A stretch of DNA of 64,000 nucleotides from Macrostomum lignano (taxonomy: Eukaryota), in contig NIVC01000897.1 of the NCBI GenBank assembly GCA_002269645.1, positions 1 through 64,000 on the forward strand, given 5' to 3'. The notes below the pieces were generated by a model. It was given only the letters and a program-made list of their open reading frames with translations. It searched no databases and was not told the DNA's origin. Position 1 is the first letter of the stretch; each line of letters begins with the position of its first letter. This document shows positions 36,788 to 56,241 of the stretch, one piece after another. A program made the translations under genes and the position numbers.

Positions 36788-37264
36788 ATGGCCTGGATAT
36801 CTTACGGTGGCCGCAGTGGCGCGACCATTCTCGATAAACGTCGCAGCCGCTACGCCGACAACACTTCCAACAGCGACGACGGCGGCGCCGTTGGATCTGA
36901 CGATCCGCCGCGTTACAAAGGCGTCCCATTGTGCGGCGCCGGCCTCTGCTCGGGCCCCGGCCTGCCGCCGAAGCGGCTGCCCCGGCCGGGCATCGACTGC
37001 GTCAACGGTGACCGGCCCTGTCTGCCCTGCGACATCGTCAACGTGCGCCTACGTGTGGCCGTCGCCGGCTCCAAGGTGAAGCGGGCGGTGGCCGAGTGTC
37101 AAAGGCGCTACTTCTGCCGAGTGTGGAACCTGCTGTTCGCCTACCTGTTCCCTGGCGAGCACCGCGATGGCCCGTGCAATCCTCGAGTCGTGAGGCCCAA
37201 CGATCCCATGCCCGTTTGCCGTGGCCAGCCGCAAACTAGTCAATGGCGGCAGAGACAAAAGTGA
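36788..37264 (+). CDS. Single-exon 158-aa protein of an unassigned Cys-rich family (CLPC...CQRRYF..VW motif), copy A
   Basis: ATG-to-stop ORF, GC-rich against an AT-rich flank, with clear homology to 40329-40778 and 55334-55789. Confidence 0.7.
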   Translation: MAWISYGGRSGATILDKRRSRYADNTSNSDDGGAVGSDDPPRYKGVPLCGAGLCSGPGLPPKRLPRPGIDCVNGDRPCLPCDIVNVRLRVAVAGSKVKRAVAECQRRYFCRVWNLLFAYLFPGEHRDGPCNPRVVRPNDPMPVCRGQPQTSQWRQRQK

Positions 37265-37984
37265 GCGTTTCTTACATTTCTGGGGCCGAAAAATCGCTGT
37301 TGGAAAGTTGATTTCCTGCCTTTCTACTGTCAAAGTTTCAATCTCGTTCGCTTCGACATCAAATCTTGGCAGTTCAGTTGCCAATGTTGATTATACTTGC
37401 TCGTCTAATTCTCGTCAAAACTCGATTACAAACGAGCAACGAGCACTTGCTCAGCCCTGGTGCCCACTAGTAGTAGCTCGGCTCTGCTTTGAATTTTCCC
37501 GTATTGCACTAGGGAAATTCCTTAAACTTCTGGTTAGTAACAAAGTGGCAGTTTTCCCAGTTTCCAGGAATCAATAAATAGGGTAAGAGGGAAACTTGCA
37601 TTCATAATTGTCAGACGGGAGGAGTTAAATGCTATTGAATAGCTTTGAATACCTGCCGGTGTTGTGAGAGGCTTCGCATGGCTTTTGTGGAAATATTTGC
37701 TAAATTGGACTTACCTAATCTTCAATCAGTCTTAATGTCTCTATCGGAGATGAGATTAGTAAATTTATTTAACCCTTAAGGCACGGGTCGGAAAACTCAG
37801 CTCTCTTCTCTATTTTCTCTCCCCTCCCCTCTCATCTCATCTATCATCTCCTTGTTCCTCTTCTCTTTCCTCCTTTATCTGATCAAAAACAATTTGCAGA
37901 CTTCTGGCTCGGGTTCTGTTCCCGAGGTTGCTTTAATGCGGCATGCACAAGCGGAATTCGATCGGGTTTCGGCTAAATTTAAAG

Positions 37985-38266
37985 GGTCGCCATCATAAAC
38001 CCGAAAAATCACAACTCCGAAAGCACTTCCAATCATAAACCCGATATATCATAACTCCGAAAACCTAAATAGTGTTGGACATTGCTAGAACTTTCGGAGT
38101 TATGATATTTCAGGTTTGTGATATTTCGGGTTTGTGATATTTCGGGCTTGTGATATTTCGGGTTTGTGATATTTTGGGTTTGTGATATTTCGGGTTTATG
38201 ATATTTCGGGTTTAAGATGGAAAGCGCTTTTCGGAGTTGTAATTTTTTGGGTTTGTGATGCCCCCA
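37985..38266. repeat. Foldback-like repeat with an internal 14-bp tandem array (GTTTGTGATATTTCGG-like)
   Basis: CATAAACCCGAAAAATCACAACTCCGAAAG on the left is the reverse complement of the right-hand CTTTTCGGAGTTGTAATTTTTTGGGTTTGTG; tandem units at about 38095-38215. Confidence 0.65.
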
Positions 38267-38517
38267 TTGTTGGCCTAGCTGAAACTACAGCTGATTATCA
38301 TTATCATCGGTCATCATATAAAAGTGTTTTACCTTTGGTCGATCGAAACTTCCGAAAGATACTAAATTAGGTCCATAGGCCCCCCAACAGTCTCAACACT
38401 GTGCAAGTGTATTCTAATCATTTCTCTGTGTCAAATTGAATCCCGCCTTGCTATGTTTATTTGCAGGCAGAGCCAGCCCAGGCCTGTCTGGGAGCGAGCG
38501 CTCAGCCCAGTTGAGGA

Positions 38518-38809
38518 CATGAAGATGACGGACCATCGGGTGCGCAGACGCCTGCCAGACGAGCAGAAGCAACCGCCTGCCAGCACGCCGCCGCCACCGC
38601 CGCCGCCGCCGCCGACAGCTAAGAAGCGACCAGCAGTTCAGACGCGCCGACAGGCCGGCAACCTGCGGTATAACCTGGTTGACAGGCCCTACCTGACTGG
38701 TGACAGCCTCAAGAGTCACCAGATTCGCGGCGCCACGCCAGCGCGGAATGGACAGTTGCGAGGCAATTTCTACGACCTGCCGGCAATGGATTCTGAGAAG
38801 AGAGCCTGA
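38518..38809 (+). CDS. Possible orphan coding exon (Pro-rich, basic); no family recognised
   Basis: GC-rich open frame preceded by an acceptor-like TTTATTTGCAG at about 38456-38466; no recognisable homology. Confidence 0.3.
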
Positions 38810-39336
38810 TTTCTTGAGGAAACAGCGGCTTAACTGCAATTTTAAAATACGTGCAGGTTTAGACTGACTGCATATGCGCTCATCTGTATCATAATGTAAT
38901 TTCTCTAAAGCTTTATAACGCATATGATTTGTTTAGTACACAAGTGTTCATTTTAGTGCTAACGCTTCTATATTTTGTTCCTATGTTAAAAAAGATGACT
39001 AGGTCTGTACTACTGCAGCTCATTAAGTAGTTGATACAACTTGCTTTTTATTTTATTGGGCAAATTTAATACACCTTTGTCACTTGTACATCACTTTTTG
39101 TATTGTTTTAGTTGTGTCGGCAACTTCAAATTTCAAATTATACATAAACTGAGCTCTTGAAAATAGTTGCTATGCCCTCTCTGCATACTGCATGTAAGAA
39201 TCTTTGGGTTTAGCGCCTCGTATTGTCCACACTTTAGTCTGTGGCTAATTGTGTCTAGTTTCGTTTGGGCCACAAACGATTGCGTCGACGGAAATTGTGA
39301 ACTAAGTAAATTTTTGCGCGCCTTTCAGGCATCGAA

Positions 39337-39462
39337 ACAGGAATACAACAGATTGCTTATCTGCGAATAGTCTATGGTCAAGCCGCCCCCATCTTTGGAT
39401 ATTCCCAACGGGTTATATTTGGATATACCCATTTGCAGATAAGCAATCTGTATATTCCTGTA
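39337..39462. mobile_element. 126-bp MITE-like hairpin
   Basis: About 31-bp arms ACAGGAATACAACAGATTGCTTATCTGCGAAT / ATTTGCAGATAAGCAATCTGTATATTCCTGT; no clear TSD. Confidence 0.55.
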
Positions 39463-40328
39463 TCAATGCGTTTGCGAGGATATTTTTATTCAATACAGCA
39501 AAGCTGAATAAACAACTTGTATAAATATACGAAAACGGTAACGTGGGCATAATGAAACGTGGACCAATTGTTCCGCAATAATCGATGAGTAGAGCTAGAA
39601 TCGACAATAATTACACTCACATCGGCCGAATTGCATGGTTTGTTCCGCATGGGATCCTTGGGGCAAGCCTCTTCTTTGCTTGGCAGTGGTGGCAGAGCAT
39701 CATCGTTACCGCATTCAATGAATCGGATGAACTCCATCAACTCTTCGTCATTCGCCTCGTCACGTCCACCCATACTCAAGTCGCTGAGAAAGTTGACCTC
39801 ATTTCCATTCAAGCCGTCAATGCTTTCAATCGGCAAATTCGATCAATTTATCATTCGTATGAGTGGCATGAATAGAGGTTAGGGCAAACAGAAGAAACAG
39901 GAACATGTATCCTCTGCTGCAGGGTTCCAGCTTATAAGACCACAACTTCATTTAACATGTTTCGTCTATGGTAATTTCAGACTGTTCATTCCGCTTAACT
40001 TTTCGTTCCAGACGTTTAGTCTATGGCCATCATTTGGCTTGCGCCAAGTGGAAAATGCCTATGACACAAATCCCTTGAATCACTCAGTGAACAATTCCCG
40101 TCTGGGAAGTTGTATCCTAGCCGTTTTGAATTGGATTTTGGACAAAACTAGACACAATTCCACTATCGAGAGTTCACGCCTCACACACAACTGCCATAGC
40201 GTCGAGGCCGGTTGTGACCTCTTGATAATCATACATTGTGTGCAGCAAACAATAACGAGTGCCCGCATGTTCCGCTCGCGCTATCTATCACACCAGACGC
40301 AGTGATTGACATTGACAGAGTTGACAAT

Positions 40329-40778
40329 ATGATGTCAAGGATTGATAGCGGAGGAATTTCAGTTGCGGCCGACCGTGGCTTCGAGCCATGTACATTACAT
40401 TGCCTACTAGACATGCCACACAGTGGTTGCTTGGACGTTCAAAGGGTCTCCCTGTGGGATGTCCCACTCTTCAAGATCTGCAGAGACTCAGTTAATCCTT
40501 GCCTACCGTGCGACATTGTCAAACTGCGGACGTGTGCCTCTGAAGCTCAGCTAGAGCGAAAAATGGCTGAGTACCAGAAGCGCTATTTCTACTGAGTCTG
40601 GGGCCTGCTATTTGCCCACCTGTTCCCAGTTCAGCCTACAAGTCCAGCCGAGTCCCAGTCAGCCAAGCGCCAGAGAAAATCTCACTGCGAAGCAAACAGC
40701 CAGCAGCAGAAACTGGAGCAACAACCGCAACCGGTTGAGTCGACTGACACCCAGGAAAAAAGAGTTTTCCCAGTTTAG
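40329..40778 (+). pseudogene. Unassigned Cys-rich family copy B, with an in-frame TGA inside the conserved motif
   Basis: ...NPCLPCDIVKLR...AEYQKRYFY*VWGLLFAHLFP... The TGA at 40593-40595 aligns with Arg of copy A, and the frame stays open for 60 more codons to a TAG at 40776-40778. Confidence 0.7.
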
Positions 40779-41065
40779 ATAGACGAGGCACGGGGGGAGC
40801 GAAGAGCAACAGACAAAAAGACTCATGAAAGAACGCCGGCGTGTGTACGTGTACTACGACTATCTACATGTAGGTGTGCCGTATTTTTTCGGTATTCATT
40901 CGACCATATCTGAAACCATATCTCGACCATATTTTGAGCAATCTACATGCACAAATGCAAGCGCAATTACACTATATATTAAAGTAGAATATTTTGATAC
41001 ACCAGTATTTGTACACTCATAATTTTTGTGTTAACTGTTGTTCCAATCTTTTTTAAAACGCCTAA

Positions 41066-41830: not shown

Positions 41831-42178
41831 TCAGCAGTGCATGTACCTGCCGACAATCTGACCACATCCGGGACAGGTGTGCACCGCGTCTTTGGCTCGG
41901 TCGCAGCAGAATGGAAAGCAGCAGAAAAGAGGACACAGAAGCCACGGCATGAGACCGTTGTACTTCTTCACTAAGGTAACGATATCCTTGTAGCAGTAAG
42001 GACAGGTCATAGGCAGCGGGTCAGGCCCGATCTGGGTGATCACAATGTCCGGCTGGTGCTGGCTCTGATGCCGGTGCTGCCGGCCCTCGTGTCCGGGCGG
42101 CCAGTCGTCCACTCCACCGCGGTCGCGAATTCGGCCGCTGGAAATCGGCGGCGATCGAAGCCGCTCCGACCTGAGCAT
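41831..42178 (-). CDS. Divergent LITAF-domain protein (115 aa) with a shortened hydrophobic segment
   Basis: PLPMTCPYC...NGLMPWLLCPLFCCFPFCCDRAKDAVHTCPGCGQIVG; both zinc-knuckle motifs (CxxC and HxCxxC) present. Confidence 0.8.
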   Translation of the reverse strand: MLRSERLRSPPISSGRIRDRGGVDDWPPGHEGRQHRHQSQHQPDIVITQIGPDPLPMTCPYCYKDIVTLVKKYNGLMPWLLCPLFCCFPFCCDRAKDAVHTCPGCGQIVGRYMHC

Positions 42179-42443
42179 GCCGAGTTGTGTGCGCGTAATT
42201 TTGGCTGGAGTTGACTGCCGTTGGCGGACCGTTCAATGCGGAGCTTCCAGGCCGGGCGCATCAAAGATCAACAATACGCGACTATTCCGTGGCTAGATGC
42301 TACAGCATTTCGCAGCTAGTTTCTGCTGCCTCTGTTGTTAATTATTTTTTAAATAGGTCTTTCCACCATAGAACCCTTATTTATTGCTGCTATTCCCACC
42401 CGATTTACGGGGCTCAAATGTCACGGAAATTTTCAATCCTCAT

Positions 42444-42887
42444 CACAGATACTAAAATAACTAGATGGGCCACTCAGGCATATATACTTAGCAAAACAGC
42501 TTTCTGCTTTCAGTTCAGTAGCAAAGAAGAATACATAAGCTATTTTTTAAAAAATAAAGGCCGCTGAAATGACTCTGACTCTGACTCTGAGTTTAGAAGC
42601 CCAAACTTGCAGGCGTAAACGACTTGCTAATTGGTTCAGCAATACTGTAGTGTACATTAGCCAGTCCCCTGAAATGTACATGGCAGCTTTAGGCTGGAAT
42701 AAAATTGGGGCGGGACGGTGGTAAAGTGGTAAGGCGCGGTTGGAGGGTTAAGCTGGGGGTAAGAGCCATTAAATAAGCCTTGGCTTTAAAAATACATTAA
42801 AATGCTTCAGTTTAACTTGCTACTAAACTAAAAGTAGCTTACACGCAAATGTGCTGAGTGGCCCATCTAGTTATTTTAGTATCTGTG
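42444..42887. mobile_element. 444-bp non-autonomous DNA transposon (P/hAT type)
   Basis: 34-bp TIR CACAGATACTAAAATAACTAGATGGGCCACTCAG; perfect 8-bp TSD ATCCTCAT (42436-42443 and 42888-42895). Confidence 0.9.
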
Positions 42888-43670
42888 ATCCTCATGATAG
42901 ATTTGGGCTGGGTAAGGAGGGATTTGGAAGAGCGGAGGGCGAAGACTGGATGGATTGAAACTACCACCTGGTTTTCGTTGTTTTTCCAGCATTTTTAAAT
43001 ATCAAAATGGTTGACCAGGTGATAGACGCTGATCGAAAGACACTGATCACTTGGGGCAAAGGGTGGCGACTTTTCAATGTTGCTGAGTATAATTATTTTC
43101 CCATATTCTCTATCGGCAAAAGGAAGAATTCCTAATTCTATCTCCAATTGTGAAGTATTCGATAATTATGTACCTTTATGAAGCATTGCATGCTAAATGA
43201 TCCTCACCGAGTCGTACTGCTCACCGCTGGTGCAACAGGTGCAGCTGCTGACGCTATCGGCGCCCTACTGGTGAGGACAGGCGCGCACTCGGCAATTCGT
43301 CGGATGCCTGCTGACTGATGTCGGCGCCCTGGATTTGGTCGGCAGTGCAGCCTGCACTGCGACGCTGTTCTCATCTCGATATTAAGACTTACTGACAGGG
43401 AATTCTTTGCTGCTCCCAGGCTTAAAAGATACGAGTACACATGTTGCGATACAATGTCCCAGGGCGAATGATGTCTTTAAAATCCAGTAAGCCGCCACTA
43501 ACTGCCCTACAAAGAACGGAACAGTGATGAGCTGATTAAAATCGGGTATACGAGGGCCCAAAGGCTTTTTTGCTGATTCTTTCAAAAAAAGTTTCGTAAA
43601 AAGATCCGAGCATATGAGTCCGGTAACAAGAAAACAGCACATCAGGAGTTTAGTAGCGAAAAAGCTAAAA

Positions 43671-43747
43671 TGTGACTGCACTGGGAATCGAGCCTGGGCT
43701 GCTGGCACATCAGAGCACCGCGCTAGACCTCTGGGCTACGGCACCCC
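43671..43747 (-). mobile_element. Second copy of the tRNA-derived short element seen at 17763
   Basis: GCCGTAGCCCAGAGGTCTAGCGCGGTGCTCTGATGTGCCAGC...GGCTCGATTCC on the minus strand. Confidence 0.65.
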
Positions 43748-44259
43748 GAAGACAAAGCTTTATTGAGAATAAAAGCTTTCCTTCGACAAAAATTTTCTGA
43801 TTAAAAGTTGGCTTTGTGGATCCGATTAAGAGAAAGAAACTCCGATTTTTCCGTCATGTTGTGAGAAGTGATGGAGTGCTGAAGGCTGTGGTAGAAGGTG
43901 GTGTTGAGGGAGGGACACAGGGGCAGAGGCAGGCCACAAGATGACTGGGCAGGCAATCTGAAGCTGGGGAGTGGAGAGAGTATGATGCAGCTGAGCAGGA
44001 TGGCCTTGAATCGTAGGTGGAGAGTCGCTGTCGAGAATCGTGTGCACCAACGGCCATACTGGCTACGGACCTGATGATGATGGCAATTATGAAAAGTAAA
44101 TTATGAAAAAGTATTATGAAAAATGTACTTAGAAATAAAGTACATTTAGATAGTTTCTGTTCTATGATTTTTTAGAATGATGCGGCTCCGTTTACATAGT
44201 GCCAATGCGATAAAGTTTGTTTGGTCAAATGTTAGCGTTTTCTTTTCAAACAGAAGCAT

Positions 44260-44585
44260 CTAGTTGATCAGCCTGTGCCTTCCAACCACTTGCTGGCAGC
44301 TGGGGCAGCGGTGCTCCGAGTCCTTCAGTTTGTCAATGAAGAACGGGATGATGCAGCAGCCGAAAAAGCACCCAACCAACGCCAGACCGCCGCAGACAAG
44401 CCAAGGAGCCAAGCCATTGATTTGATTCACCGCTGTGGTGATGTTGACGCCATCATCGTCACCGGATGCTTATCGAATGATACAGACGGTTTGTCAACAA
44501 CTTGCACTGCCGGCGGCTGCTGCTGCTGCTGGTAGCATCCCTGTGGAACATCGTATGCCGGTGGCGTAGCCTGGCCCTTCTCCAT
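44260..44585 (-). pseudogene. LITAF-domain pseudogene, frameshifted, first CxxC deleted
   Basis: MEKGQATPPAY...SFDKHPVTM, then a frameshift where the paralogues have TCPHC. The downstream frame gives GVNITTAVNQINGLAPWLVCGG...HRCPSCQQVVGRHRLIN*. Confidence 0.85.
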
Positions 44586-46533
44586 GGCTGGCTTTCAACT
44601 TGTTTGTCCTGTCTGTTATGTAGAATCTAGTTTTTACCCCGACTGCGAGCGGTAAGTGTGCTGCCGAATTCAGAGTCTACTTATATGATGTGTCCGAATG
44701 CCTTCCGCTAGACCGCAAGTAACCCAAAGAGTGGACAGCATGCCACACAAAAATTTCTCTAAAATGCGTACAAAACCAATGATCTCTAATTCAATCAGTG
44801 ACAGCTCAATATTATTGCGCAAAAAAATCGTGAGCATCTTGCTGTGGCAAATGTTTCTCATTTCCACATATACTGAGCTCAAAATGCTGACTGGCAGCTT
44901 TTCTACATTGTAAATCTTGAGCTGTACGTCTTGTAGAATTTCGGGTCTCTGTTTTGGGGCGTTGTTTTTTTTCGATGCGCAGCGATAAGCCAGTAAATTC
45001 ATAACAATTATTAAGCGTGCCTGTTATTGTATAGCGCCGAGAAGCATATGCAATAGCTAAAAGCAGAAATTCCTTCTGAGCTGCACTGGAGTTAAGGACT
45101 TGATGCCCGAAGCTTTGGATTTAGAATGCCTTTTGTTGTACGCTCCGTGTTGGTTTGCACCAACTAATAGCTATATTCAGCTCAAGTTACTGGCCGTAGC
45201 TATAGAAACTCGATGGAAAATGCTCGACTTTATTGCGATTGATGTCATCTACATGCACTAGTAATGCAGAAATATCACTATTCATTTTGCATATCACAGA
45301 AATATGTCTGATGCTCTGCAATATAGCCAGGTTACAGCCTGCTGCTCAAGCTGCCTACAGCTTGTACGAAAGTGTGACAATTGACTGCTGCAATTTGACT
45401 GCTGAAAATTTAGGCTGTGGTTAGGTTTAGGGCCTAGGGACTGCTGTGTTTTCGTCAATTGTGAGAAATAGCCAACATGGAGACTGGGATTGTCAGTTCA
45501 GTAGCTTGCGAGATATAGACACTTTTTTGACAATTTGTTAAGAATGATCGCGGAAGTGAAACTATATATCTGGTTCCATTCACTGGGTTAGATATTGAGC
45601 AACATGAGCAGCTTCTTGCACAACTCGAGGAGTTGCTGTGCAATCACAATTTTGACTCGCACATACGAGTATTTTCTTCACAACGGGATGGTGAAGTCAT
45701 ATGGCACCCCTTTTCCGAACCTTGACGTTGGATTGAAACTTTAAAAGAGGCATTCTACTAAAAGTAGCGAGCTGACGACGCCAACTCTTCACTGCTTATC
45801 TACACAGAAAAAGCAGCAGGAATCCTCAAAAAGAAATACTGGTGTAAATTTCACGCCTGAACAAGAAGACTATGCAGGCCCGTGGAATCCGTTGGACTCG
45901 AAGAGATGCTGACGCTGTTCTCATTTCGATTTTAAGACCTACAGACGGTGAATTCTTTGCTGCTGTTGCTGTTACTCTAGCATATCTCAAGCAGCTCCCA
46001 AGTTTTAAAAGGTACTCTTTCATAAATTACAAAACAACGGCCCACGGAAACTTTGATGATGAATGGTGTCTTTTAAATCCAGTTCCATCCGGCATATACG
46101 GCTCGTATTTGGTTTGGCCGTATCGTCCATCGGGAGAAATCATTTTATATTTGCTTAATGAAAACTTTGCAACAATGAGACAGTGGCTCGTAATGAAGAG
46201 CATGTACAGATCCGTGTGAATGCGAGACATCAGCAGATGCCTTACCTAGGTTAATGCTTAGCTTTCGCTTACCATGATTGGCTAAAAAAGTTTTATACAG
46301 CAATAGATAGAAAGCCATACTTAAAGAAGAATAGAATTTTCAATCAGAAATTTTTTCAAAGATAAAAACACAAAAAAGTACATTGGATGGCTTTGTGAAC
46401 CTTGTGAACCTCTAATTACGAGCTTATGATTTTAGAATGATGCGGCCCTTTTTACATTGTGCCGATGCGATAAAGTTTGCTTGGTCAGGTCTAATCGTTC
46501 TTTTCGTTTCTTTTTGAGCAGCAAAATCTGTGC

Positions 46534-46944
46534 CTAGCTGATCAGCCTGTGCCTTCCAACCACCTGCTGGCAGTTGGGGCATCGGTGCTCCGCGTCCTTC
46601 AGATCGTCAATACAGAACGGGATGAGGCAGCAGCCGAGCCAGCAGCCAATTAGAATGAGGCCGCCACTGACAAGCCACGGAGCCAAGCCATTAACGTAGC
46701 TCACCGCCGTGGTGATGTGGGCGCGGCAGTGCGGGCACGTCGTCGTCACCGGTTCCTTATTGAATGACACCGCGGCCGCAGGCTGTTGGACGACAACTTG
46801 CACTGATGACTGCTGCGGCTGCTGCTGCATTGGGTAATGCTGCTGCGGAGGAGGATACGGCGCTCCAGTTTGAGGATAGTGCTGCTGCTGGTAGCCTCCC
46901 TGCGAAGCATTGTATGGCGGTGGCGGAGCCTGGCCCTTCTCCAT
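46534..46944 (-). CDS. LITAF: LITAF/SIMPLE-like membrane-associated zinc-binding protein (136 aa), coding region intronless
   Basis: N-terminal PPPY motif and Pro/Gln-rich region, then TCPHC...hydrophobic PWLVSGGLILIGCWLGCCLIPFC...HRCPNC. The family call is secure; one-to-one orthology is not. Confidence 0.93.
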   Translation of the reverse strand: MEKGQAPPPPYNASQGGYQQQHYPQTGAPYPPPQQHYPMQQQPQQSSVQVVVQQPAAAVSFNKEPVTTTCPHCRAHITTAVSYVNGLAPWLVSGGLILIGCWLGCCLIPFCIDDLKDAEHRCPNCQQVVGRHRLIS

Positions 46945-47884
46945 GGCTGGCTCTCAACTTGTTTTTCCTGTCTGTGTTATGTAGAATCTAATTTTTACCC
47001 GGACTGCGAGCGGTAAGTAAGTTCGCTGCCGATTTCAGAGCCCACTTATATTTTGTGTCCGAATGCTGCCTGCCTGTCGCTAGACAGCAGCAGCCCAAAG
47101 ATTGGACAGCGTGCTACTCAAAATTTTCTTGAAAATGCGCACAGCATTTCATCTCTCGTCCATTTTGCAACGACTGCATATTATTGAGCGAGAATGGTGA
47201 GCATCTTGTTGGCAAGAACTTTCCGAGTGTAGCTGCTTTAATTGCTTCACATCAATCCTTAAGTTTACTTTACTCGAGTCTGCTAACTTTACCAATTAAA
47301 TGTGCGCATGTCTGAGAGATGGCGTGCGAAAGGCTTTCCTGGCTCGGTTGTATGATCAGACCAGGGACGAAGTCCCTGGCCTGAGTTAAGAAGTCCCTGG
47401 CCTGAGCATACAACCGGGGCCAGCTTAAGAAGTCCCATGGCTCAGGCACGTTGTTTGAAGAGTTTTTCATTTCCACGTACTGAGAGCACAATGCTGGCGG
47501 ACCGCTTTTCTTTATACTAAATCTTGAGCCGTATTTAGGTAGAATTTCGGCTTTCTATTTTGGGGCGTTGTTTTTGCGATGCGATGAGTCAGTAAATACG
47601 TGGCTGTTTATTGTACAGCGCTAACTAATAGGTGCGAACAGCTGAAAAAACTCGATGGAAAAAGCTCAATTTTTTTGCGATTGATGTCAACTACATACTA
47701 ATGCAGCAATAGCACTGCTCAGATATCAAATCGCAACAATAGCTAGTATGCCTGATGCGCTACAGCCTGCGGCTCTGCTACACTGCTTTGATTTGGAAAT
47801 CCATACACATTGGTAGGTAGCATCTTTATACTAACGCAGATCACAGAGCAGGGTGAACCAGTTAGTTTGCTACTAACTCACTTT

Positions 47885-48550
47885 GAATGAATGGCCGATG
47901 AATTGAATGAGTCAATGAGCAGCCTTATTTACGCTGGTAGGGCGCCTGCATCTTCCTTACACGACTGTGGGCAGTGCGACTCAGCGCGGATGATGTGGTC
48001 TGCCTACTGGAGTTGCCGACAGCGCAACAGGTCGCTTGGACGGTCCAGACAGTGCACCGTTGGATACTCGCTCGTCGCCGGTCTTGATCGCGGCGTGCAG
48101 CAGGCCAGCGTGCTCCGCGTCAACGTCAACTCGCTGTTCGAGCGATTCAGTCAACGTCCAGGTCTCGGCAGTGTAAAGCAGGACGGTCTCGACCACAGTC
48201 TGGAACAACACCGTCCTCTGGCGGTCACGGAGGACCTCGGACTGCAAGACTGTTCTCACAGAACTAAAGGCAGGCGGACGTCGGGAGCCAGACCGTCAAG
48301 TTAGACGATATACTGGCATCCGTATGTTCCGTCGTCTGTCCATATACGCCTCGTCAAGAAATTGCAACCTCGATGTTGTGCTCGATGTGGTGGGGCACGC
48401 AGAGCACGACGGGCTTCTACGTGTTGACCACCAGCCCACACTCACCGCAACCGCAACCACCCCGTCCAGCTCTCGCTGGATGCTCTCGACGGTTAAGGAC
48501 TCTAGGGCGAGATCGTCGGAGTAGCCAAGCACACTGAGCCGTCTGTCTGG
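47885..48550 (-). mobile_element. Degenerate non-LTR retrotransposon (RTE-like) RT, 3' part
   Basis: Minus strand: LSVLGYSDDLAL (YxDD), then LFQTVVETVLLYTAETWTLT, with an (ATTC)-like tail near 47885-47920; frameshifted. Confidence 0.8.
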
Positions 48551-48739
48551 TTGGCGTCAACCCATGCTTCGCCGCAGCAGAAAGCCATCGTAGTAGAAAA
48601 AGCATCCCGCAGCACCCAGTTAAGCTCCAAAAAACAGGAACGTCACTAGGATATTTCCCTGGAGCACCCAGAGAATATCTCAAAGAAATCCGATAGGCCG
48701 TCAGGTGTTAACACAGCAGCTTTACTGTTAGCACACCAG

Positions 48740-49340
48740 TTAACACACCAGCCTGCTGAACAAGCACTGCAACCTTGGGAGGCAACGAGGCTGCCTCAGC
48801 TCCTCAGTAATGGCGCACCTACAAGATGGTCTCCATCCCGAAGAAAGGCGCCTCCACCATCCTGGACAACCAGCGGGGCATCGCGCTAGAAGGCACAACA
48901 CCGAAGCTGCTGAACGCAATTCTGCGCAACCACCTCCTGCCCGGCCTCAAATCGCTGCTGCTGAGCCTCCAAAGCGGCTTCCGCCCGGGCAGATCCACTA
49001 CCGACCAGGTTGCCACCATCCGCTCTGTCATCGAGGCCTGCAAGACCCGCCAGCGCTCCGCGTCAATCATCTTCGTCGACTTTTGCAAGGCGTTTGACTC
49101 GGTGTCCAGGCCTGCGATCGCGTGGCTTCTATCTCATTATGGCGTACCTGCTGCGCTAGTGAGCGCGGTGATGGATCTCTAACGCGACTCCAGGGGTTTT
49201 GTCATGTCAAACAACGGCCCCACAAAAGATTTCGGCACCAGCTCAGACGGTTGTGGACTACGTGCTTCGTCGGTCCCACCGCGAGGATGACAGCTACTTG
49301 CTGGTCTCGCGCCGAAGCTCCACACACCGTGCTGTTTCGC
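48740..49340 (+). mobile_element. Degenerate non-LTR retrotransposon RT, 5' part, in opposite orientation to its 3' part
   Basis: IPKKG...NQRGIAL...KLLNAIL...QSGFRPGRSTTDQV...IFVDFCKAFDSV...VVDYVLRRS, the early RT subdomains of LINEs. Confidence 0.85.
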
Positions 49341-50135
49341 TTCCCGCTCTCGCGGGTTAAGGGAAAGGGTTAGATTCGGTATGGAGTCGCACTCCATCCT
49401 GAGGGCCTATGAGTTTCACAACAGCTGATCGATGCCAAAACGTCGTTCTACCAACGACACGAGAGCTGCTGTTGTGTCAGCGGAAGCCTGTCTGACCTCT
49501 TCGACACCTCGTCTGGTGTTTGCAACACGCTGACTTTGTTTGTGCTGCTCAGTGTCAGTGTGCTGACCCTGAGAGTGCACTCCATCCCCAAGCAGTCACC
49601 CAGACATCCCACGTACTGTCGCTGTCTGTCTGGCGTTACCCGTCTCTCTTCGTGGGCGAGCCTCCATTGGCTGACTTACCCGCAGTAGGGTCTGTGTGTC
49701 GGGGGCAAGGGGTGAGACTTACGAGCTACATCGCTCTGGCCTAGTATAAGGCTCTTTGTGTCTCCTTTCCCTGCGAAATACGCTCGCTCCGCTTTCCATA
49801 TATGCGTAGCAAGCTTTGTTAGTCGCTACAGATCCTTGTAAAATAAGACATCAGCAAGTCATAATAATGCTTCATTTTCAATTGTCATGAATGGCTAAAG
49901 AGGTTGTTATAAAGCATTAGATAAAAAGCCATGTTTTATATTTAAAAGAAGTTTCAGATTAAACTTTTATTGTAGGTAAAAGTACAAAAAAGTACATTGG
50001 GTAGTTAGTTTAGTGTATCTCTGAATATGATTTTTAGAATGATGGGGCTCTGTGAACATTGTGCCGATGCGATAAAGTTTGCTTGGTCAGGTCTAATCGT
50101 TCTTTTCGTTTCTTTTTGAGCAGCAAAATCTGTGC

Positions 50136-50546
50136 CTAGCTGATCAGCCTGTGCCTTCCAACCACCTGCTGGCAGTTGGGGCAGCGGTGCTCCGCGTCCT
50201 TTAGATCGTCAATGAAGAATGGGATGAGGCAGCAGCCGAGCCAGCAGCCAATTAGAATGAGGCCGCCACTGACAAGCCACGGAGCCAAGCCATTAACGTA
50301 GCTCACCGCCGTGGTGATGTGGGCGCGGCAGTGCGGGCACGTCGTCGTCACCGGTTCCTTATTGAATGACACCGCGGCCGCAGGCTGTTGGACGACAACT
50401 TGCACTGATGACTGCTGCGGCTGCTGCTGCATTGGGTAATGCTGCTGCGGAGGAGGATACGGCGCTCCAGTTTGAGGATAGTGCTGCGGCTGGTAGCCTC
50501 CCTGCGAAGCATTGTATGGCGGTGGCGGAGCCTGGCCCTGCTGCAT
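50136..50546 (-). CDS. LITAF: LITAF/SIMPLE-like protein (136 aa), near-identical paralogue of 46534-46944
   Basis: MQQGQAPPPPY...TCPHC...HRCPNC. The first ATG is at 50546 (the ORF track starts at an upstream TTG). Only about 4 aa differ from the 46.5-kb copy. Confidence 0.93.
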   Translation of the reverse strand: MQQGQAPPPPYNASQGGYQPQHYPQTGAPYPPPQQHYPMQQQPQQSSVQVVVQQPAAAVSFNKEPVTTTCPHCRAHITTAVSYVNGLAPWLVSGGLILIGCWLGCCLIPFFIDDLKDAEHRCPNCQQVVGRHRLIS

Positions 50547-51076
50547 GGCTATAGCTTTCAAGTTATTTGTCCTGTCAGTGCTATGTAGAATCTAGTGTTT
50601 GCTCAGACTGCGAGCGGTAAGTAAGTTTGCTGTCGATTTCAGAGCCCACTTATATTTTGCATCCGAATGCTGCCTGCCTGTTGCTAGACACAAAAATTTC
50701 TCGAAAATGCGCACAGAATTTCATCTCTTCTCCATTGTGCGACGGCTGCATATTATTGAGCGAGAATCGTGAGCATCTTGTTGGCAAGAACTTTCCGAAT
50801 GTAGCTGCTTTAATTGCTTCACATCAATCCTTAAGTTTACTTTACTCGAGTCTGCTAACAGTACCAATTAAATGTGCGCTGGGCTGTGAGAATAGTCGTG
50901 CGAGACGAGAGGCTTTCCTGGCTCGGTTGGATGCTCAGGCACATTGCTTGAAGATTTTTTCATTTCTACGCACTGAACTCAAAAATGAGGGTAGGGCGGG
51001 CAGATCTCGAGCTGTGGAACTTTGGCTTGTTGCCTTGTTGCCTGTTTATTGTACAGCGCCAACTAATAGGTGCGGA

Positions 51077-51120
51077 CACAGATGCTAGAATAGCAGATAC
51101 TAGTTATTCTAGTATCTGTG
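51077..51120. mobile_element. 44-bp hairpin micro-element with CACAG termini
   Basis: Arms CACAGATGCTAGAATA / TATTCTAGTATCTGTG; flanks GGTGCGGA / TGTGCGAA; the paralogous empty site near 47630 reads TAGGTGCGAACAGCTG. Confidence 0.75.
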
Positions 51121-51497
51121 TGTGCGAACAGCTGAAGAAACTCAATGGAAAATGCTCAACTTTTCTGTGATTGATGTAATCTACATGTACTAGTAATGCA
51201 GAAATATCACTGTTCATTTTGCATATCACAGAAATATGTCTGATGCTCTGCAATATAGCCAGGTGTACAACCTGCTGCTTAAGCTGCCTACAGCTTGTAA
51301 TATCCAGACACATTGTAAGTAGCATCCGGATACTAAACGCAGATCACAGGGCAGGGTTGAACTGAATAGAGATTCGACAAGTTAGAACTTTGCTTGTATC
51401 TGTGTTAGTTATCGACAATGGAATTCAGTATTTTTAACAGAATATGTAATTTAGCGCCAAATACATGTATAATATTAATCATTAACAAATAGTTTAC

Positions 51498-51533
51498 CAA
51501 GGACTTCTAGACTAGTTAGTCTAGAAGTCCTTG
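51498..51533. mobile_element. 36-bp perfect hairpin micro-element with CAAGG termini
   Basis: CAAGGACTTCTAGACTA-GT-TAGTCTAGAAGTCCTTG, flanked by a perfect 8-bp TSD TAGTTTAC (51490-51497 and 51534-51541). Confidence 0.85.
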
Positions 51534-51989
51534 TAGTTTACTTTGAGTGGAGCCAGCCAGAGTCTAGCTTTGGGTGTGATTGTTTAGTTACAATCGCTGG
51601 AGATTCTGCTCGTATGGCAACAAGAAACTTTCGACATTCTTTCGTCTTACGATACCCCACAGCCCAATTGATTACTTGCGTCAAATGGAGAATGGTAAGA
51701 ATGGAAACAGACGAGCAAACTGCAAAAATCTTAATCGTAGCTTACTAGAGCCATTTTAACAAATTTTCCATTTAGGGTATCGTATAACGAAAGTGAATAT
51801 AAGGATCGTGCTCTAGCTAGTAAGCTAGTAAGCTAGTAAGCGCGATTTAAAACTGGAAAGATCTTTGGGTTGTATTGGAATACCTGGTACATGTATTGCA
51901 GTTATGTACAAGCGCGCGTAATTCAACTGTACTCGTACTTTAATCGTACTTAAAAATTCCGACGAAGTTACGCACAGCAAAATCTGGAT

Positions 51990-52343
51990 CTAGCAGATCA
52001 CCTTGTGCCTGCCAATCATCTGCTGGCAGCTGGGGCAGCGGTGCTCCGTGTCCTTCAGAGTGTTGATGCAGAATGGGATGAGGCAGCAGCCGAGCATACA
52101 GCCAATCAACGCCATACCGCCGCAGACAATCCAAGGAGCGAAGCCATTGATCTGATTTACCGTCGTGGTGATGTTGGAGCCGCAGTGGGGACACGTGGTC
52201 GTCACCGGTTCCTTGTCGAATGATATTGGCTGCATGACCATATTGTACGGTACTGGCGGCTGCTGCTGTTGCAGCACTTGTTGGTATTGCTGCTGCTGTA
52301 TGCATTCCTGCTCGCATTCATTCCTTCCCGCCACTTTAGTCTG
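51990..52343 (-). CDS. LITAF-domain protein; 5' end uncertain (upstream exon, trans-splicing, or a short form starting at ATG 52241)
   Basis: SFDKEPVTTTCPHCGSNITT...PWIVCGGMALIGCMLGCCLIPFCINTLKDTEHRCPSC. There is no in-frame ATG upstream of 52241. An acceptor-like TTTTGATATTGCCACAG lies at about 52340-52357 (-). Confidence 0.8.
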   Translation of the reverse strand, partial: QTKVAGRNECEQECIQQQQYQQVLQQQQPPVPYNMVMQPISFDKEPVTTTCPHCGSNITTTVNQINGFAPWIVCGGMALIGCMLGCCLIPFCINTLKDTEHRCPSCQQMIGRHKVIC

Positions 52344-54219
52344 TGGCAATATCAAAACGGGACTTCTTGAATTCTTTTTTATATATTTAGTTATATAGAT
52401 TCAAGAAATTAGTTATTGGTTATTTCGATAGGATAATAATTTCATCACTAAGGGGGCTTTTGACGGTGCTGATTTCGAATTTATCAGCTTTGTTTTATTG
52501 GTAGCTTCAACCCAACTATATGTAGCTTAAAGCCAACCACTGGGGTACGGGGATGGGGGGTTCTAGGATAGGGAGATTCTTCATGGAGATTGATTTTTTA
52601 TGTACCTAAACTTCAATAGGTCTATAGTCTTGGGGGTCTATTGAAGATTAGGCATCTAAACTTTTAGACCTTGAGGGGGGTAGCTAGCTCACCAAAGAAC
52701 CATGGCCAAGAACTGGGACATGAGGAATGGGGGGTTAGGGTTTCATTTACCATGTTAGCATTCAGAAACATTTGGCATCGTTACTAGCTTCCTAATTTCA
52801 TATCTTGAAAACACTTTTTCTTAATCTTTTTGTTTCTAAAAAATGTTTATTTAAATGCATTATTTTTACAAACTGTATCCAATTCTCATTGACAGCATTT
52901 GGGGATTAACAAATTGACCACGAGGCATGATCAATTTGCACAGAATCGCCTCTGGAGAGATTAGTGCCCATCCTGGACCTCAACGACATTGAACTTTTTG
53001 ACGGAAGTGAGGAATCTGGGTGATTCCGTATCGCGACTGAGATGTACAAGAAACGGCTTGAACAGTTGTCAAAGAGGGCATCAATGCCTTCATTGTGCAG
53101 TGGTGAACCTGCGCGTGTCAAAGCGACGTTCTTCTAATTAAAATGTCCATGGACTTCTAACCCTCTGCTATCACAACGAGTATATCAATGATATATTTTC
53201 TAGTGGCATATTTTCTGATTTTTCTTGTCCCCAAATTTGTCTACGGTGCAACATATTTGATGCAATGCATTCTCCAAAATGTCGGTTGTGAAGTTGCTTG
53301 TAGAGTGCAATCAATAAATAATAAAGGCTACCGTCACAACTAAATGTTTTGGATCAACCAGAAAATCTGGTTTTTAGGAATTCAATAAGGAGATTTTAAG
53401 TAAAAATTGTGAGTATATTTGCGGACTCAAAAAATAATACAATTCGGGTTTCATAAAACTTATTCAAACTTTTTGTTTAAACACTATATTATAAGTTAAA
53501 GTCGTGTCTTGTAAAAGATTGATAAAAAACGTAATGGTTGAGCCTCCGATGTTCTTTGCGAACAATTTAAAATACTCGATGCTCTTCCAAACTTAATTAA
53601 ATGTGTACCAGTAAAACACTGTTTGAACGGGTACAGTTACAGCTCCTCCAATCGACCACTGTTTCAGTAGCCAGGCTCTGAAAGAATAGAATTCAGAAGG
53701 GCAGAGCAATGCGGGGATGGTTGAGTGAAATGTACATACGGGGAAGGGGTAGAGCAATGGGGGTTGGTTGTGTGAAATGTACATACGGGGAAGGGGTAGA
53801 GCAAGAGGGGATGGTCGTGTGAACTTTACGAGTAATAATAGCAACAATAGCTCGTCAGCATAGTCATAAAAATCAAACTTACACTATGCATCGATATTGA
53901 AAAAGCAATCCAGCTCTACATGCCAATAAAGGAAGCTTTTCGCGGCGGCGCCACGGCGATTTGATCGGTAAGCGAAATCCGACGACTGTCGCTGGTATCC
54001 AGCCGCGGCGGGGGGTCGAAACTTTGAATCGACGGCTTTCCTGGCCGGTTGCTCACCTGATATTCGAAAATGAGTTGTCTTATAACTATTGACTGATTGT
54101 GTTTCTTAATGGCATTAACAGGGACGTCGCCAGGAGGAGGGACAGGGGCAGGGGCATAGGAGGGACAGGGGAAGACAGTGGGGACAGGTGGGATAGGGGG
54201 GACAATGGGGAAAGGAGGG

Positions 54220-54560
54220 ACTAAAATGAGTGCCCGAGGCGCCAAAATGAGTGCCTGAGGCGCCACAATGAGTGCCTGATTTGGCGCTAAAATGAGTGCC
54301 TGAGGCGCTACAATGAGTGCCTGATTTGGCGCTAAAATGAGTGCCTGAGGCGCCACAATGAGTGCCTGATTTGGCGCTAAAATGAGTGCCTGAGGCGCCA
54401 AAATGAGTGCCTGATTGGAGCGCTAAAATGAGTGCCTGATTGGAGCGCTAAAATGAGTGCCTGAGGCGCCACAATGAGTGCCTGATTGGAGCGCTAAAAT
54501 GAGTGCCTGAGGCGCCACAATGAGTGCCTAATTGGGGCGCTAAAATGAGTGCCTGCGGTG
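54220..54560. repeat. Minisatellite with alternating 21/24-bp units (AAAATGAGTGCCTGA core)
   Basis: aatgagtgcctgaggcgcc / aatgagtgcctgatttggcgct dimers. Confidence 0.9.
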
Positions 54561-55049
54561 CCAAAGTGAGTACTAACAACAGCAATTCCTTTGCTATAAT
54601 ATTAATAACAGAATGCTTTGCTCTGGAGTTTAGGTTTTGTCCCTCTCACCATAAAAGCCATGGCAACGCCCATTTGAATCATACTCTTTATAAGAAAAAA
54701 TTCTTGACGTAAACGATAGATCCTACTTATACGAGTATAAAGTAGAAAACGGCTGCAATAGTGTCAGTGCGCCTATTAAAGATAAGTTTTTTATGTACAT
54801 AATTATACTTTAGGACATTAAGTGGAGGACACTTTACTACTTTATTTTAAATAAGTTTAAGTAGTAATTTCAATTTTAGGAAGTCCTTGGAGAGACGGCA
54901 TTTTGTCCTTCAGCTGGAAGGTGATTAACCTCCAGGACTAACTCAATTAGTAGGACGGAAAGCAACGTTTCTTGGAAAATTCGAGGCGCGCAGGTTTCAC
55001 CGAAAATGTATTCTGTTGCACATTTTGTCATATCAATAGAGCTATAAGA

Positions 55050-55214
55050 ATGGCATATCATATCAAAAGATAAACATTGGGTCTGCCTCCTATCAGAAGC
55101 AACAACAATTGTTGTGCTGAAAAACCAGACACGTCTTTTATCTTTGTAATGCATTTTTGGTAAAAAACTTGCCTCCTAACATTTTCCAAGTCCTTCTACT
55201 TGCGTAGTCCTTGT
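55050..55214. mobile_element. Relic right arm related to the CAAGG-terminated MITE at 25068-25766
   Basis: ATATCAAAAGATAAACATTGGGTCTGCCTCCTATC...TGTGCTGAAAAA...GTCCTTCTACTTGCGTAGTCCTTG matches 25600-25766. Confidence 0.65.
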
Positions 55215-55333
55215 CATAAACTATTCCCGAAAAATGTTATTTTGAGCTTTGCTATCACCTGGTTTAGGCTGACTTTTGACAGTGCTCATAGGTCATGACA
55301 TTTTTAACAACTGGGAGAATCATGGGCCTTCTC

Positions 55334-55789
55334 CTAAGGAATGATAAATTGCTCAGGCAGTCTCAGTGCCTTGGAATATAAGCGAGAATTCTCCACCCCT
55401 ACCTTGAAGAATTTCTTCTTTTTCGCAGCAGCCGGCTGTGCATCACTGGTTTCGCCTTCAGCGTCAGCGTCCTCGTCAGCACCAGCATCTTGCTCTGGCT
55501 CGACGTCCGCGTCAGCGTCCGCCTGTCCGAACAGCTGGCCGAACACGAGGTGCCAGACGTCGCGAAAGTAGCGCCGCTGGCAGTCGAGGGCGCGCATCGC
55601 CAGCAGTTTGGCGTTGTCGGGATCGGTGAAGCGCAACTCGGCGTAGCAGCAGGGCAGGCAGCAGCCAGGGGCGCTGCAGCGCGTGTACACCGGCATGCAG
55701 GTGGACTCCAGGGAGAAGTCCCTGCTGATCGGAAATTGCCTGTCGGCGGCATGGCTGCGGCAGCATTGGGTAGTGCTGTAGCGTTGCAT
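55334..55789 (-). CDS. Single-exon 151-aa protein of the unassigned Cys-rich family, copy C, with an acidic tail and a KKKK basic patch
   Basis: GCCLPCCYAELRF...ALDCQRRYFRDVWHLVFGQLFG; GC-rich ATG-to-stop ORF homologous to 36788-37264. Confidence 0.7.
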   Translation of the reverse strand: MQRYSTTQCCRSHAADRQFPISRDFSLESTCMPVYTRCSAPGCCLPCCYAELRFTDPDNAKLLAMRALDCQRRYFRDVWHLVFGQLFGQADADADVEPEQDAGADEDADAEGETSDAQPAAAKKKKFFKVGVENSRLYSKALRLPEQFIIP

Positions 55790-56130
55790 GTTGAAGGCTG
55801 CTTTAAAAGGCGAGCTGCTCGAATTCCAAATTGAAAGTTGAAGCTAAGTGAGCAGAATTTTACTATACATTTATTTGTACGACTGTCTCTGGCAGATAGA
55901 CTGACTGGAGTATTCATTAGATACGCACTTTTAGCCTTCGACTGTTGCCACAGACCATGGGCCGGCGAAATTTTTTACCATTTAAAAGAATTATGGCCGC
56001 GGGCTAGATGAGAGCGGAAAAATAGATTGAGAGATGAGAGAGTAGAGGCGATGGAGAAGATGAAAGAAAAAAAAGAGGAGAGGGAGGGAGGGGACAGAAG
56101 AGTGCGAAGAAGGGAGAGGAAAAGGGTGAG

Positions 56131-56186: not shown

Positions 56187-56241
<55 letters not shown>

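What the first reader, a model, noticed from the sequence alone, without database searches (positions are those of the whole stretch)
36788..55789. Three dispersed single-exon paralogues define an unrecognised Cys-rich protein motif
Seen in sequence: three separate GC-rich ORFs share a motif. A (36788-37264,+): DCVNGDRPCLPCDIVNVRL...AECQRRYFCRVWNLLFAYLFP. B (40329-40778,+): ICRDSVNPCLPCDIVKLRT...AEYQKRYFY*VWGLLFAHLFP. C (55334-55789,-): RCSAPGCCLPCCYAELRF...LDCQRRYFRDVWHLVFGQLFG. Consensus: C-x5/6-CLPC-x~20-CQRRYF-x2-VW-x-L-[LV]-F-x2-LF. The flanking regions are unrelated and low-complexity, so the motif has been kept across deep divergence, which suggests selection on a small domain (possible metal-binding knuckle plus amphipathic helix). 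I do not recognise the family. The copies bracket the LITAF array, with A and B on one side and C on the other. Inference: this is a lineage-specific gene family that may be co-regulated with the LITAF cluster.
Basis: partly seen in the sequence, partly recalled or inferred. Interest (0 to 1): 0.72.

Follow-up and report, generated by a model that had tools for sequence, protein, structure and literature searches.

The report
Flatworm-only small gene family with new motif
The three motif-bearing reading frames are real relatives: two are transcribed, two-exon genes and one is a dead copy, forming a small family so far seen only in the flatworm Macrostomum lignano. They share one short cysteine-plus-helix module of unknown function, which makes this an ordinary lineage-restricted "orphan" family, not a new kind of system.

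Summary
A, B and C translate as written, and they resemble each other far beyond chance, but only over about 45-55 residues. The window is Macrostomum lignano contig NIVC01000897.1.

A and C are already annotated from transcripts as hypothetical proteins: Mlig017691.g3 (271 aa) and Mlig007488.g2 (175 aa). Each has two exons with canonical GT-AG introns, so they are not single-exon genes. B is a pseudogene. It carries an in-frame TGA in two of the three near-identical contigs that carry this locus (homeologous contigs) and a frameshift in the third. It is not annotated on any of them.

Substitutions between the copies preserve the amino-acid sequence in the annotated frame (P from 5e-4 to below 5e-5; A-B dN/dS 0.22). 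The motif is therefore coding and has been under purifying selection.

An exhaustive HMMER search of 1.84 billion protein representatives found only the two M. lignano clusters. Pfam, PDB sequence search, Foldseek and a profile comparison with the neighbouring LITAF domain found nothing.

AlphaFold predicts a mostly disordered protein. Its only confident element is the conserved helix (…CQRRYFxxVWxLLFxxLF), preceded by a C-x6/7-C-x2-C knuckle.

My best reading is a docking or self-association helix capped by a cysteine cluster, but the function is inferred, not shown. Co-regulation with LITAF was not tested. Interest is modest.

The parts
36788..37260 (+). Gene A (BOX15_Mlig017691g3), exon 1 coding part. 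It ends at the donor AA|GTGAGC (phase 2).
   Evidence: ORF and sequence. P0001 equals this exon joined to 38467-38809. The gene sits at record position 36788 of NIVC01000897.1.
36995..37159 (+). Conserved module in A: DCVNGDRPCLPCDIVNVRL…AECQRRYFCRVWNLLFAYLFPGE.
   Evidence: GC3 is 0.85. There are 0/165 nt differences among the three homeologous contigs. Helices are predicted at protein residues 81-89 and 94-120.
38467..38809 (+). Gene A, exon 2 coding part, after the acceptor TTTGCAG|G. It is Pro-rich and basic and is not shared with C.
40329..40778 (+). Copy B, a pseudogene. The module lies at 40476-40631 and the in-frame TGA at 40593-40595 (CGA in one homeologous contig).
   Evidence: It is not called as a gene on any of the three contigs. 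GC3 is 0.58 and CpG o/e 0.6. Differences between homeologs are spread 12/12/9 over the codon positions.
55403..55789 (-). Gene C (BOX15_Mlig007488g2), exon 1 coding part. It ends at the donor AAG|GTAGGG (phase 0). The module lies at 55526-55687.
   Evidence: (P0008). GC3 of the module is 0.91.
53916..54056 (-). Gene C, exon 2 coding part, after the acceptor ATATCAG|G.
41831..52355 (-). Context: an array of five LITAF-like (zf-LITAF-like) single-exon genes or gene remnants, all on the minus strand, bracketed by B and C.
   Evidence: PF10601 is recorded on the equivalent genes of the homeologous contigs.

Best explanation
A and C are two live members, and B a decayed member, of a small protein-coding gene family so far seen only in the flatworm Macrostomum lignano. 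Each live gene has two exons. The encoded proteins (271 and 175 aa) are predicted to be almost wholly disordered and have diverged beyond recognition, except for one module of about 45 residues in exon 1. That module is a cysteine knuckle (C-x6/7-C-x2-C) followed by a short helix and a 27-residue helix. The long helix carries a fourth conserved Cys and an invariant aromatic/hydrophobic stripe (C-Q-R-R-Y-F-x-x-V-W-x-L-[LV]-F-x-x-L-F). Shown here: homology of the three copies, coding constraint on the module, spliced transcript-based gene models, the restricted distribution and the disabling of B. Inferred: the module is the functional part. It most likely acts as a docking or self-association helix whose start is fixed by the Cys cluster, probably through a bound metal ion. 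The fast-evolving tails would then supply different outputs: PPRY, poly-Pro and basic stretches in A, and an acidic run plus KKKK in C. The duplications are old (synonymous sites between A and B are near saturation) and long predate the recent genome doubling that produced the three near-identical contigs.
For: Homology. Coding constraint: the annotated frame scores best of all six frames in all three pairs. Relocating the observed substitutions at random reaches the observed BLOSUM score with P=5.5e-4 (A-B), 1.5e-3 (A-C) and <5e-5 (B-C). Nei-Gojobori dN/dS for A-B is 0.22 over the module and 0.14 over the C-terminal block, with pS=0.67. GC3 is 0.85-0.91 in A and C, compared with 0.70-0.73 in the neighbouring LITAF genes. 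Gene models: P0001 and P0008 equal the window exons joined at GT-AG sites. The Mlig_3_7 annotation was built from StringTie/TACO transcripts with TransDecoder ORFs, and transcripts overlapping repeats were removed (PMC5730564). Distribution: the exhaustive HMMER search gave two representatives, both M. lignano; a word-index search with full-length profiles gave the same two. Structure: in the 271-aa model only residues ~90-125 exceed pLDDT 65 (82-84 at residues 101-120, helix 94-120) and the rest is below 50. The module folded alone gives helices at 14-20 and 25-51. The central 18-mer has a hydrophobic moment of 0.56-0.64, and the conserved Cys lies on the hydrophobic face. B: TGA on contigs 897 and 640; a 7-nt indel separates the ATG from the motif frame on contig 1827; no gene is called there on any contig.
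Against: There is no functional, localisation or expression-pattern data. The gene ids occur in none of the supplementary tables I could search. The AlphaFold alignments have only four rows (A, C or a C-type relative, and B in two pieces), and pLDDT for the knuckle is below 60, so the fold of the Cys part is not established. Amphipathicity of the whole helix is not significant against shuffles (P=0.08-0.2). A-C dN/dS over the whole module is about 1.0; I attribute this to shared high-GC3 codon usage depressing dS, but that is an inference. Only one species is available, so constraint cannot be measured on orthologues. Differences between homeologs are too few to be informative. The exon-2 reading frames are TransDecoder choices, with no conservation to back them.
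Confidence: 0.55

Rival explanations
1. Same genes, different mechanism: the module is a membrane anchor. The clustered cysteines (CCLPCC in C, CLPC in A) are S-acylated, and the basic/aromatic amphipathic helix lies in the membrane interface. This would tether a disordered tail to endomembranes, where the neighbouring LITAF proteins also act.
For: Neither protein has a signal peptide or transmembrane segment (sequences). The Cys cluster lies immediately upstream of a helix with one aromatic/hydrophobic face and one Arg/Lys face. The genes lie next to LITAF genes.
Against: The helix in the B-type copy has net charge 0. One conserved Cys sits inside the helix on the hydrophobic face. Mean hydrophobicity is about 0, and the hydrophobic moment is not significant over the full helix. 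Nothing links the family to LITAF except position.
Confidence: 0.15
2. Same genes, different mechanism: the four conserved cysteines form a structural zinc site (knuckle plus helix, similar to a treble clef), and the basic protein binds nucleic acid or chromatin in the nucleus.
For: C-x6/7-C-x2-C-x21-23-C is kept in A, in C and in the contig-1827 copy of B. The A-type protein has pI 10.3 and KKRP/RRQ stretches; the C-type has KKKK.
Against: There is only one CxxC pair, and no zinc-finger family matches even at E<=10 in Pfam or in PDB sequences. The C-type protein is acidic (pI 5.7). The fourth Cys is Tyr in two B copies, though those copies are pseudogenes.
Confidence: 0.12
3. The family is not truly new. 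It is a fast-evolving 'hidden orthologue' of a known protein family, or a domesticated fragment of a mobile element, diverged beyond what sequence methods detect.
For: Flatworm genes are known to diverge so fast that many orthologues are hidden (PMC5495077, listed; abstract only read). The window holds mobile-element debris close by: an ORF that I read as a Tc1-like helix-turn-helix at 35915-36247, inside inverted repeats at 35673-36538, and an ORF that I read as a reverse-transcriptase fragment at 48826-49182. Neither ORF was searched against a database.
Against: There is no hit in Pfam, PDB sequences or Foldseek. The profile comparison with LITAF gives probability 0.1%. There are only three copies per contig and no other M. 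lignano protein cluster. The GenBank annotation excluded transcripts overlapping repeats. The copies have no terminal repeats of their own.
Confidence: 0.1
4. The shared block is not a protein at all. It is duplicated non-coding DNA (for example a regulatory element or part of a long non-coding RNA) on which TransDecoder called chance ORFs.
For: There are no homologues outside the species. The flanks of the ORFs are unconserved and low in complexity. For A-B, other frames also keep about 40-50% identity.
Against: The annotated frame is the best of six in all three pairs, and the substitutions are significantly protein-preserving. GC3 is 0.85-0.91, against 0.45-0.50 at second codon positions. 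Long open frames are kept in A and C on all three homeologous contigs, while B has acquired independent lesions.
Confidence: 0.05

Closest known systems
Taxonomically restricted ('orphan') gene families of flatworms, for example the flatworm-specific Mlig-sperm1 family described in M. lignano (PMC5816591)
   Same: Short, transcribed genes with no homologue outside the lineage and no Pfam domain. They are present in several near-identical copies because of the recent genome doubling, and are annotated only as hypothetical proteins.
   Different: No phenotype or expression domain is known for this family. It was not in the neoblast/germline tables of that paper that I could search. The two live members share only one ~45-residue module.
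LITAF/SIMPLE-like domain proteins (PF10601), the neighbours in the array
   Same: Small Cys-containing proteins with a CxxC-type knuckle, a hydrophobic stretch and a PPxY motif (PPRY in A). They sit in the same gene cluster.
   Different: Our module has no second (H)xCxxC knuckle. Its hydrophobic part is a soluble-type helix, not a 20-plus-residue membrane-inserted stretch. hhalign probability is 0.1% and there is no Pfam hit. It is not a member.
Zinc-knuckle-plus-helix (treble-clef-like) mini-domains
   Same: A CxxC knuckle is followed about 20 residues later by a helix that carries a further Cys. The module is small and self-contained within disordered proteins.
   Different: There is only one CxxC pair, and the other two ligands would be single cysteines at unusual spacing. 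There is no sequence or fold match, and metal binding was not tested.
Cys-cluster plus amphipathic-helix membrane anchors (S-acylated cysteine strings, as in phospholipid scramblase; UniRef attaches the scramblase name to one C-type entry)
   Same: CCLPCC in the C-type resembles acylated Cys strings, and an adjacent helix has a basic face.
   Different: The Pfam scan of that entry (P0010) finds no scramblase domain, nor any other domain, so the name appears to be an annotation artefact. Acylation was not tested.

Membership tests
Lineage-restricted (orphan) protein-coding gene family | No detectable homologue outside the lineage | tested here: met
   The exhaustive HMMER search of 1.84e9 representatives gave only P0001 and P0002. 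All 11 listed cluster members carry M. lignano names or, for one unnamed fused prediction (P0009), contain the same C-type sequence. The profile search of 5.8e9 clusters gave the same two. Caveat: other Macrostomum species are hardly represented in these databases.
Lineage-restricted (orphan) protein-coding gene family | Transcribed and spliced | tested here: met
   The deposited gene models are transcript-derived, and they join the window exons at canonical GT-AG sites. I did not examine the reads themselves.
Lineage-restricted (orphan) protein-coding gene family | Sequence evolves as a protein (purifying selection in one frame) | tested here: met
   A-B dN/dS is 0.22; relocation tests give P=5.5e-4, 1.5e-3 and <5e-5; the annotated frame is the best of six.
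LITAF/SIMPLE-like (PF10601) | Two zinc knuckles (CxxC … HxCxxC) flanking a long hydrophobic segment, and a match to the family profile | tested here: not met
   No Pfam hit at E<=10. hhalign against the window's own LITAF paralogues gives probability 0.1%.
F-box (considered because of LP…W spacing, from memory) | Match to the F-box profiles | tested here: not met
   No Pfam family at E<=10 for A, C or the full-length proteins.
Described zinc-finger families | Profile match and four metal ligands in a known spacing | tested here: not met
   No Pfam or PDB match. The four conserved Cys have a spacing that I cannot assign to any family. Metal binding itself cannot be tested with these tools.
Transposable-element or viral ORF | High copy number, terminal repeats, or homology to transposase, reverse transcriptase or capsid proteins | tested here: not met
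   There are three copies in 64 kb and only two protein clusters in the species. No repeats flank the copies. There is no Pfam hit. The annotation excluded transcripts overlapping repeats.
Phospholipid scramblase / DUF4708 (names UniRef gives to two C-type entries) | Match to the corresponding Pfam profiles | tested here: not met
   P0010 and P0011 match 0 families at E<=10.
Pseudogene (copy B only) | Disabling lesions, loss of coding-type constraint, no gene model | tested here: met
   B carries a TGA on contigs 897 and 640, and on contig 1827 a 7-nt indel leaves no in-frame ATG. Differences between homeologs are 12/12/9 by codon position. GC3 and CpG have decayed. B is not called as a gene on any contig. 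Whether it is still transcribed was not tested.

The most novel reading that the evidence does not exclude
The module is a genuinely new mini-domain, a metal-capped or acylated docking helix, that arose within Macrostomum. It would be functionally tied to the LITAF cluster it brackets. For example, C could be co-transcribed with the co-oriented LITAF array, and both A and C could feed, through the PPxY or Pro-rich tails and the helix, into the same endosomal or ubiquitin-ligase adaptor pathway.
Probability: 0.08. Interest if true: 0.55.

Novelty: new member of a known kind. Interest (0 to 1): 0.3.

Why it matters
If it holds, this is a clean small example of how a lineage-restricted family evolves: one short module is kept for a long time while everything around it, including the second exon, is replaced and one copy dies. 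It would also add a Pfam-absent motif to the M. lignano annotation. M. lignano supports transgenesis and RNAi, so the function is directly testable. The finding does not bear on a long-standing open question, and flatworm genomes contain very many such orphan genes.

Tried and rejected
1. The word-index protein search with a 91-aa fragment of A found nothing. That result was uninformative, because the later exhaustive search and the full-length profile search both recovered the window's own protein.

2. Exact-sequence look-ups of the A ORF and of a LITAF ORF failed, because the annotated products are spliced or start elsewhere.

3. I looked for further shared exons downstream of A, B and C. 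tblastx found none, and the second exons of A and C are not similar (E=3.9). No exon-2-like sequence follows B.

4. I tested whether the module derives from the LITAF domain, and rejected this.

5. PDB sequence search gave only chance-level hits (E=0.19 and 0.42). Foldseek of the module model against PDB gave no match. The model is small and of moderate confidence, so this negative result is weak.

6. I searched for the gene ids in the full text of the paper library and in the supplements of five M. lignano papers. A sixth paper had no held supplement. There were no occurrences, so no expression pattern could be attached.

7. A bacterial-type promoter and terminator scan upstream of A is irrelevant for a eukaryote and I ignored it.

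8. The position-of-difference counts alone, for A-B, are not significant by my own rough chi-square. The relocation test replaced them.
Full report
**1. The observation**

A-B gives E=1e-14 and A-C gives E=1e-7; the next hit is at E=0.06. BLASTP of the full-length proteins aligns only the 56-residue block (E=2e-8). tblastx of the three loci with kilobases of flank finds no other shared coding segment. The ORFs are GC-rich islands in AT-richer surroundings: A is 66%, C 60% and B 52%, against 38-44% in the flanks. So the motif is real, lies at the stated coordinates, and is well beyond chance.

**2. Where the window comes from and what is annotated there**

A first word-index search with a fragment of A found nothing. 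An exhaustive HMMER search with a profile of the three modules against 1.84 billion representatives found exactly two proteins, at E=9e-26 and 2.5e-23.

- P0001 (271 aa) is ORF A joined to part of the ORF at 38453-38809.
- P0002 (202 aa) is a near-identical relative of ORF C joined to the end of the ORF at 53916-54401.

All 11 listed cluster members carry Macrostomum lignano names or, for one unnamed fused prediction (P0009), contain the same C-type sequence. The A-type genes are BOX15_Mlig017691 g1-g3. The C-type genes are Mlig007488 g1/g2 and Mlig015263 g1. Older UniProt predictions are also in the clusters.

The gene for P0001 lies at position 36788 of NIVC01000897.1 in assembly GCA_002269645.1. 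The window is therefore the first 64 kb of that contig. The same locus is present on two further contigs, NIVC01000640.1 and NIVC01001827.1. This fits the large duplicated fraction that the genome paper reports for this assembly (PMC5730564).

That paper also states that the deposited annotation consists of StringTie/TACO transcripts with TransDecoder ORFs. [quoted passage not shown] A and C therefore rest on transcript evidence. I did not see the reads themselves.

**3. Gene structure**

- A: exon 1 is 36788-37260, with donor AA|GTGAGC. The acceptor is TTTGCAG|G and exon 2 is 38467-38809. The two coding parts total 816 nt, giving 271 codons plus a stop.
- C: exon 1 is 55789-55403, with donor AAG|GTAGGG. 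The acceptor is ATATCAG|G and exon 2 is 54056-53916, giving 175 codons.

Both introns are canonical, and their phases differ (2 and 0). The second exons show no similarity to each other (E=3.9), and nothing like them follows B. 'Single-exon' is therefore wrong. The shared module lies in exon 1.

**4. Is the module coding?**

In all three pairwise comparisons the annotated frame gives the highest BLOSUM62 score of the six frames. I then kept each pair's substitutions but relocated them to random sites. The observed score was reached with P=5.5e-4 (A-B), 1.5e-3 (A-C) and <5e-5 (B-C).

Nei-Gojobori dN/dS for A-B is 0.22 over the module and 0.14 over the CQRRYF…LF block. Synonymous sites are near saturation (pS=0.67). 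A-C gives about 1.0 over the whole module and 0.35 over the C-terminal block. Both A and C have GC3 of 0.85-0.91. I infer that this shared codon bias lowers the apparent dS between them.

Taken together, the block has evolved as a protein under purifying selection. The duplications are old compared with the ~1-2% divergence of the three homeologous contigs.

**5. Copy B is dead**

On contigs 897 (the window) and 640, B carries TGA where A has CGA. On contig 1827 that codon is still CGA, but a 7-nt indel separates the only ATG from the motif frame, and the C-terminus is also shifted.

Differences between the B homeologs fall evenly on the three codon positions (12/12/9), and B diverges faster than A or C. 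Its GC3 (0.58) and CpG o/e (0.6) have decayed towards background. No gene is called at B on any contig.

B was evidently functional for a long time after the A-B duplication, given dN/dS of 0.22, and is now a pseudogene.

**6. What the protein looks like**

There is no Pfam family at E<=10 for the ORFs or the full-length proteins. This includes the entries that UniRef labels 'phospholipid scramblase' and 'DUF4708'. PDB sequence search gave nothing significant. Foldseek of the module model against PDB gave no match. A profile comparison with the LITAF domain of the neighbours gave probability 0.1%.

AlphaFold2 on the module gives mean pLDDT 68, with helices at 14-20 and 25-51. AlphaFold2 on the 271-aa A-type protein gives mean pLDDT 49. 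In both predictions the conserved helix is the only confident element: residues 94-120, with pLDDT 82-84 at residues 101-120. Almost everything else is below 50. Both alignments have only four rows, so these models are indicative only.

The conserved positions are four cysteines (C-x6/7-C-x2-C-x21-23-C) and the stripe Y-F-x-x-V-W-x-L-[LV]-F-x-x-L-F. On a helical wheel the hydrophobic residues and the fourth Cys share one face, and Arg/Lys occupy the other. The central 18-mer has a hydrophobic moment of 0.56-0.64, but the full helix is not significantly amphipathic against shuffles.

Neither protein has a signal peptide or a transmembrane segment (read from the sequences). A is very basic (pI 10.3) and carries PPRY, a poly-Pro run and KKRP. 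C is mildly acidic (pI 5.7) and has an Asp/Ala run and KKKK.

**7. Most likely mechanism**

Shown: this is a lineage-restricted family with two live members and one pseudogene, whose only constrained part is the Cys-knuckle-plus-helix module.

Inferred: the module is a docking or self-association element, with the cysteines most likely holding a metal ion that fixes the start of the helix. The divergent disordered tails would carry other short motifs.

Rivals for the mechanism are an S-acylated membrane anchor and a small nucleic-acid-binding zinc finger. Rivals for the identity are a hidden orthologue or mobile-element derivative, and non-coding DNA with chance ORFs. The coding tests argue strongly against the last.

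I put about 0.85 on the identity and about a third on the specific mechanism. The stated confidence of 0.55 reflects both.

**8. Relation to the LITAF array**

The arrangement is A→ B→ ←LITAF×5 ←C. C is therefore head-to-tail upstream of the co-oriented LITAF genes, and A and B are convergent with them. The same order holds on the other two contigs.

There is no sequence relationship to LITAF, and I could find no expression data. Co-regulation remains an untested idea. It is slightly more plausible for C than for A.

**9. Novelty and verdict**

The genes are already in GenBank and UniProt as hypothetical proteins. As far as these tools show, the family relationship between the two clusters, the motif, and the pseudogene status of B are not described. 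This is a new, uncharacterised family of a well-known kind: taxonomically restricted genes, which are abundant in flatworms.

Interest is modest (0.3). No step had to be referred.

Noticed in passing
window 14147-15055 (minus strand): The 21-nt tandem repeat encodes YSPTSPT heptads, the C-terminal domain of the RNA polymerase II largest subunit. An Rpb1 gene is annotated on the minus strand at the equivalent place on the homeologous contigs.
   Followed up: yes
window about 27800-34500 (plus strand): A multi-exon gene for a 207-aa protein with 4Fe-4S ferredoxin-type domains lies just upstream of gene A. From memory it looks like NDUFS8. It is conserved on all three contigs.
   Followed up: partly
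window 44263-44448 and upstream to about 44560 (minus strand): The second LITAF copy matches only residues 75-136 in one frame. The part that should hold the first CxxC knuckle reads in another frame (…KHPVTMMASTSPQR*), so this copy may be frameshifted in the window. The equivalent gene on contig 640 is annotated as a 113-aa zf-LITAF-like protein.
   Followed up: partly
window 35673-36538: Nested inverted repeats (arms 110-113 nt, 92-96% complementary) enclose an ORF at 35915-36247 that I read as a Tc1/mariner-type helix-turn-helix. This looks like a decayed DNA-transposon remnant 250 bp upstream of gene A.
   Followed up: no
window 48826-49182 (plus strand): An ORF with a reverse-transcriptase-like sequence (…FRPGRSTTDQV…FVDFCKAFDSV…) sits between the two near-identical LITAF copies (97% identical, at 46534-46944 and 50136-50561). 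This suggests a retroelement fragment inside a recent tandem duplication.
   Followed up: no
L004 15205-15460 versus window 39957-40328: The 5' flank of B on contig 1827 does not align with the other two contigs (44% mismatch), and the B ORF there is 7.5% diverged against 1.6% for its 3' flank. A rearrangement or insertion next to B on that contig is likely.
   Followed up: partly
window 63275-63994, 2307-2950, 8220-8870, 57259-57700, 56050-56600: Long, very regular tandem repeats (periods 21, 8, 8 and 8 nt, plus GA-rich tracts) fill much of the intergenic space. The 21-nt array at the window's end reads as an open heptad-like repeat in several frames, but I did not link it to a gene.
   Followed up: no
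P0009 (1031 aa, older prediction), C-type locus: An older gene prediction fuses the C-type protein to an upstream low-complexity region that has a weak tubulin-tyrosine-ligase / ATP-grasp match (E=0.002-0.08). This is probably a gene-merging artefact of the earlier assembly.
   Followed up: partly
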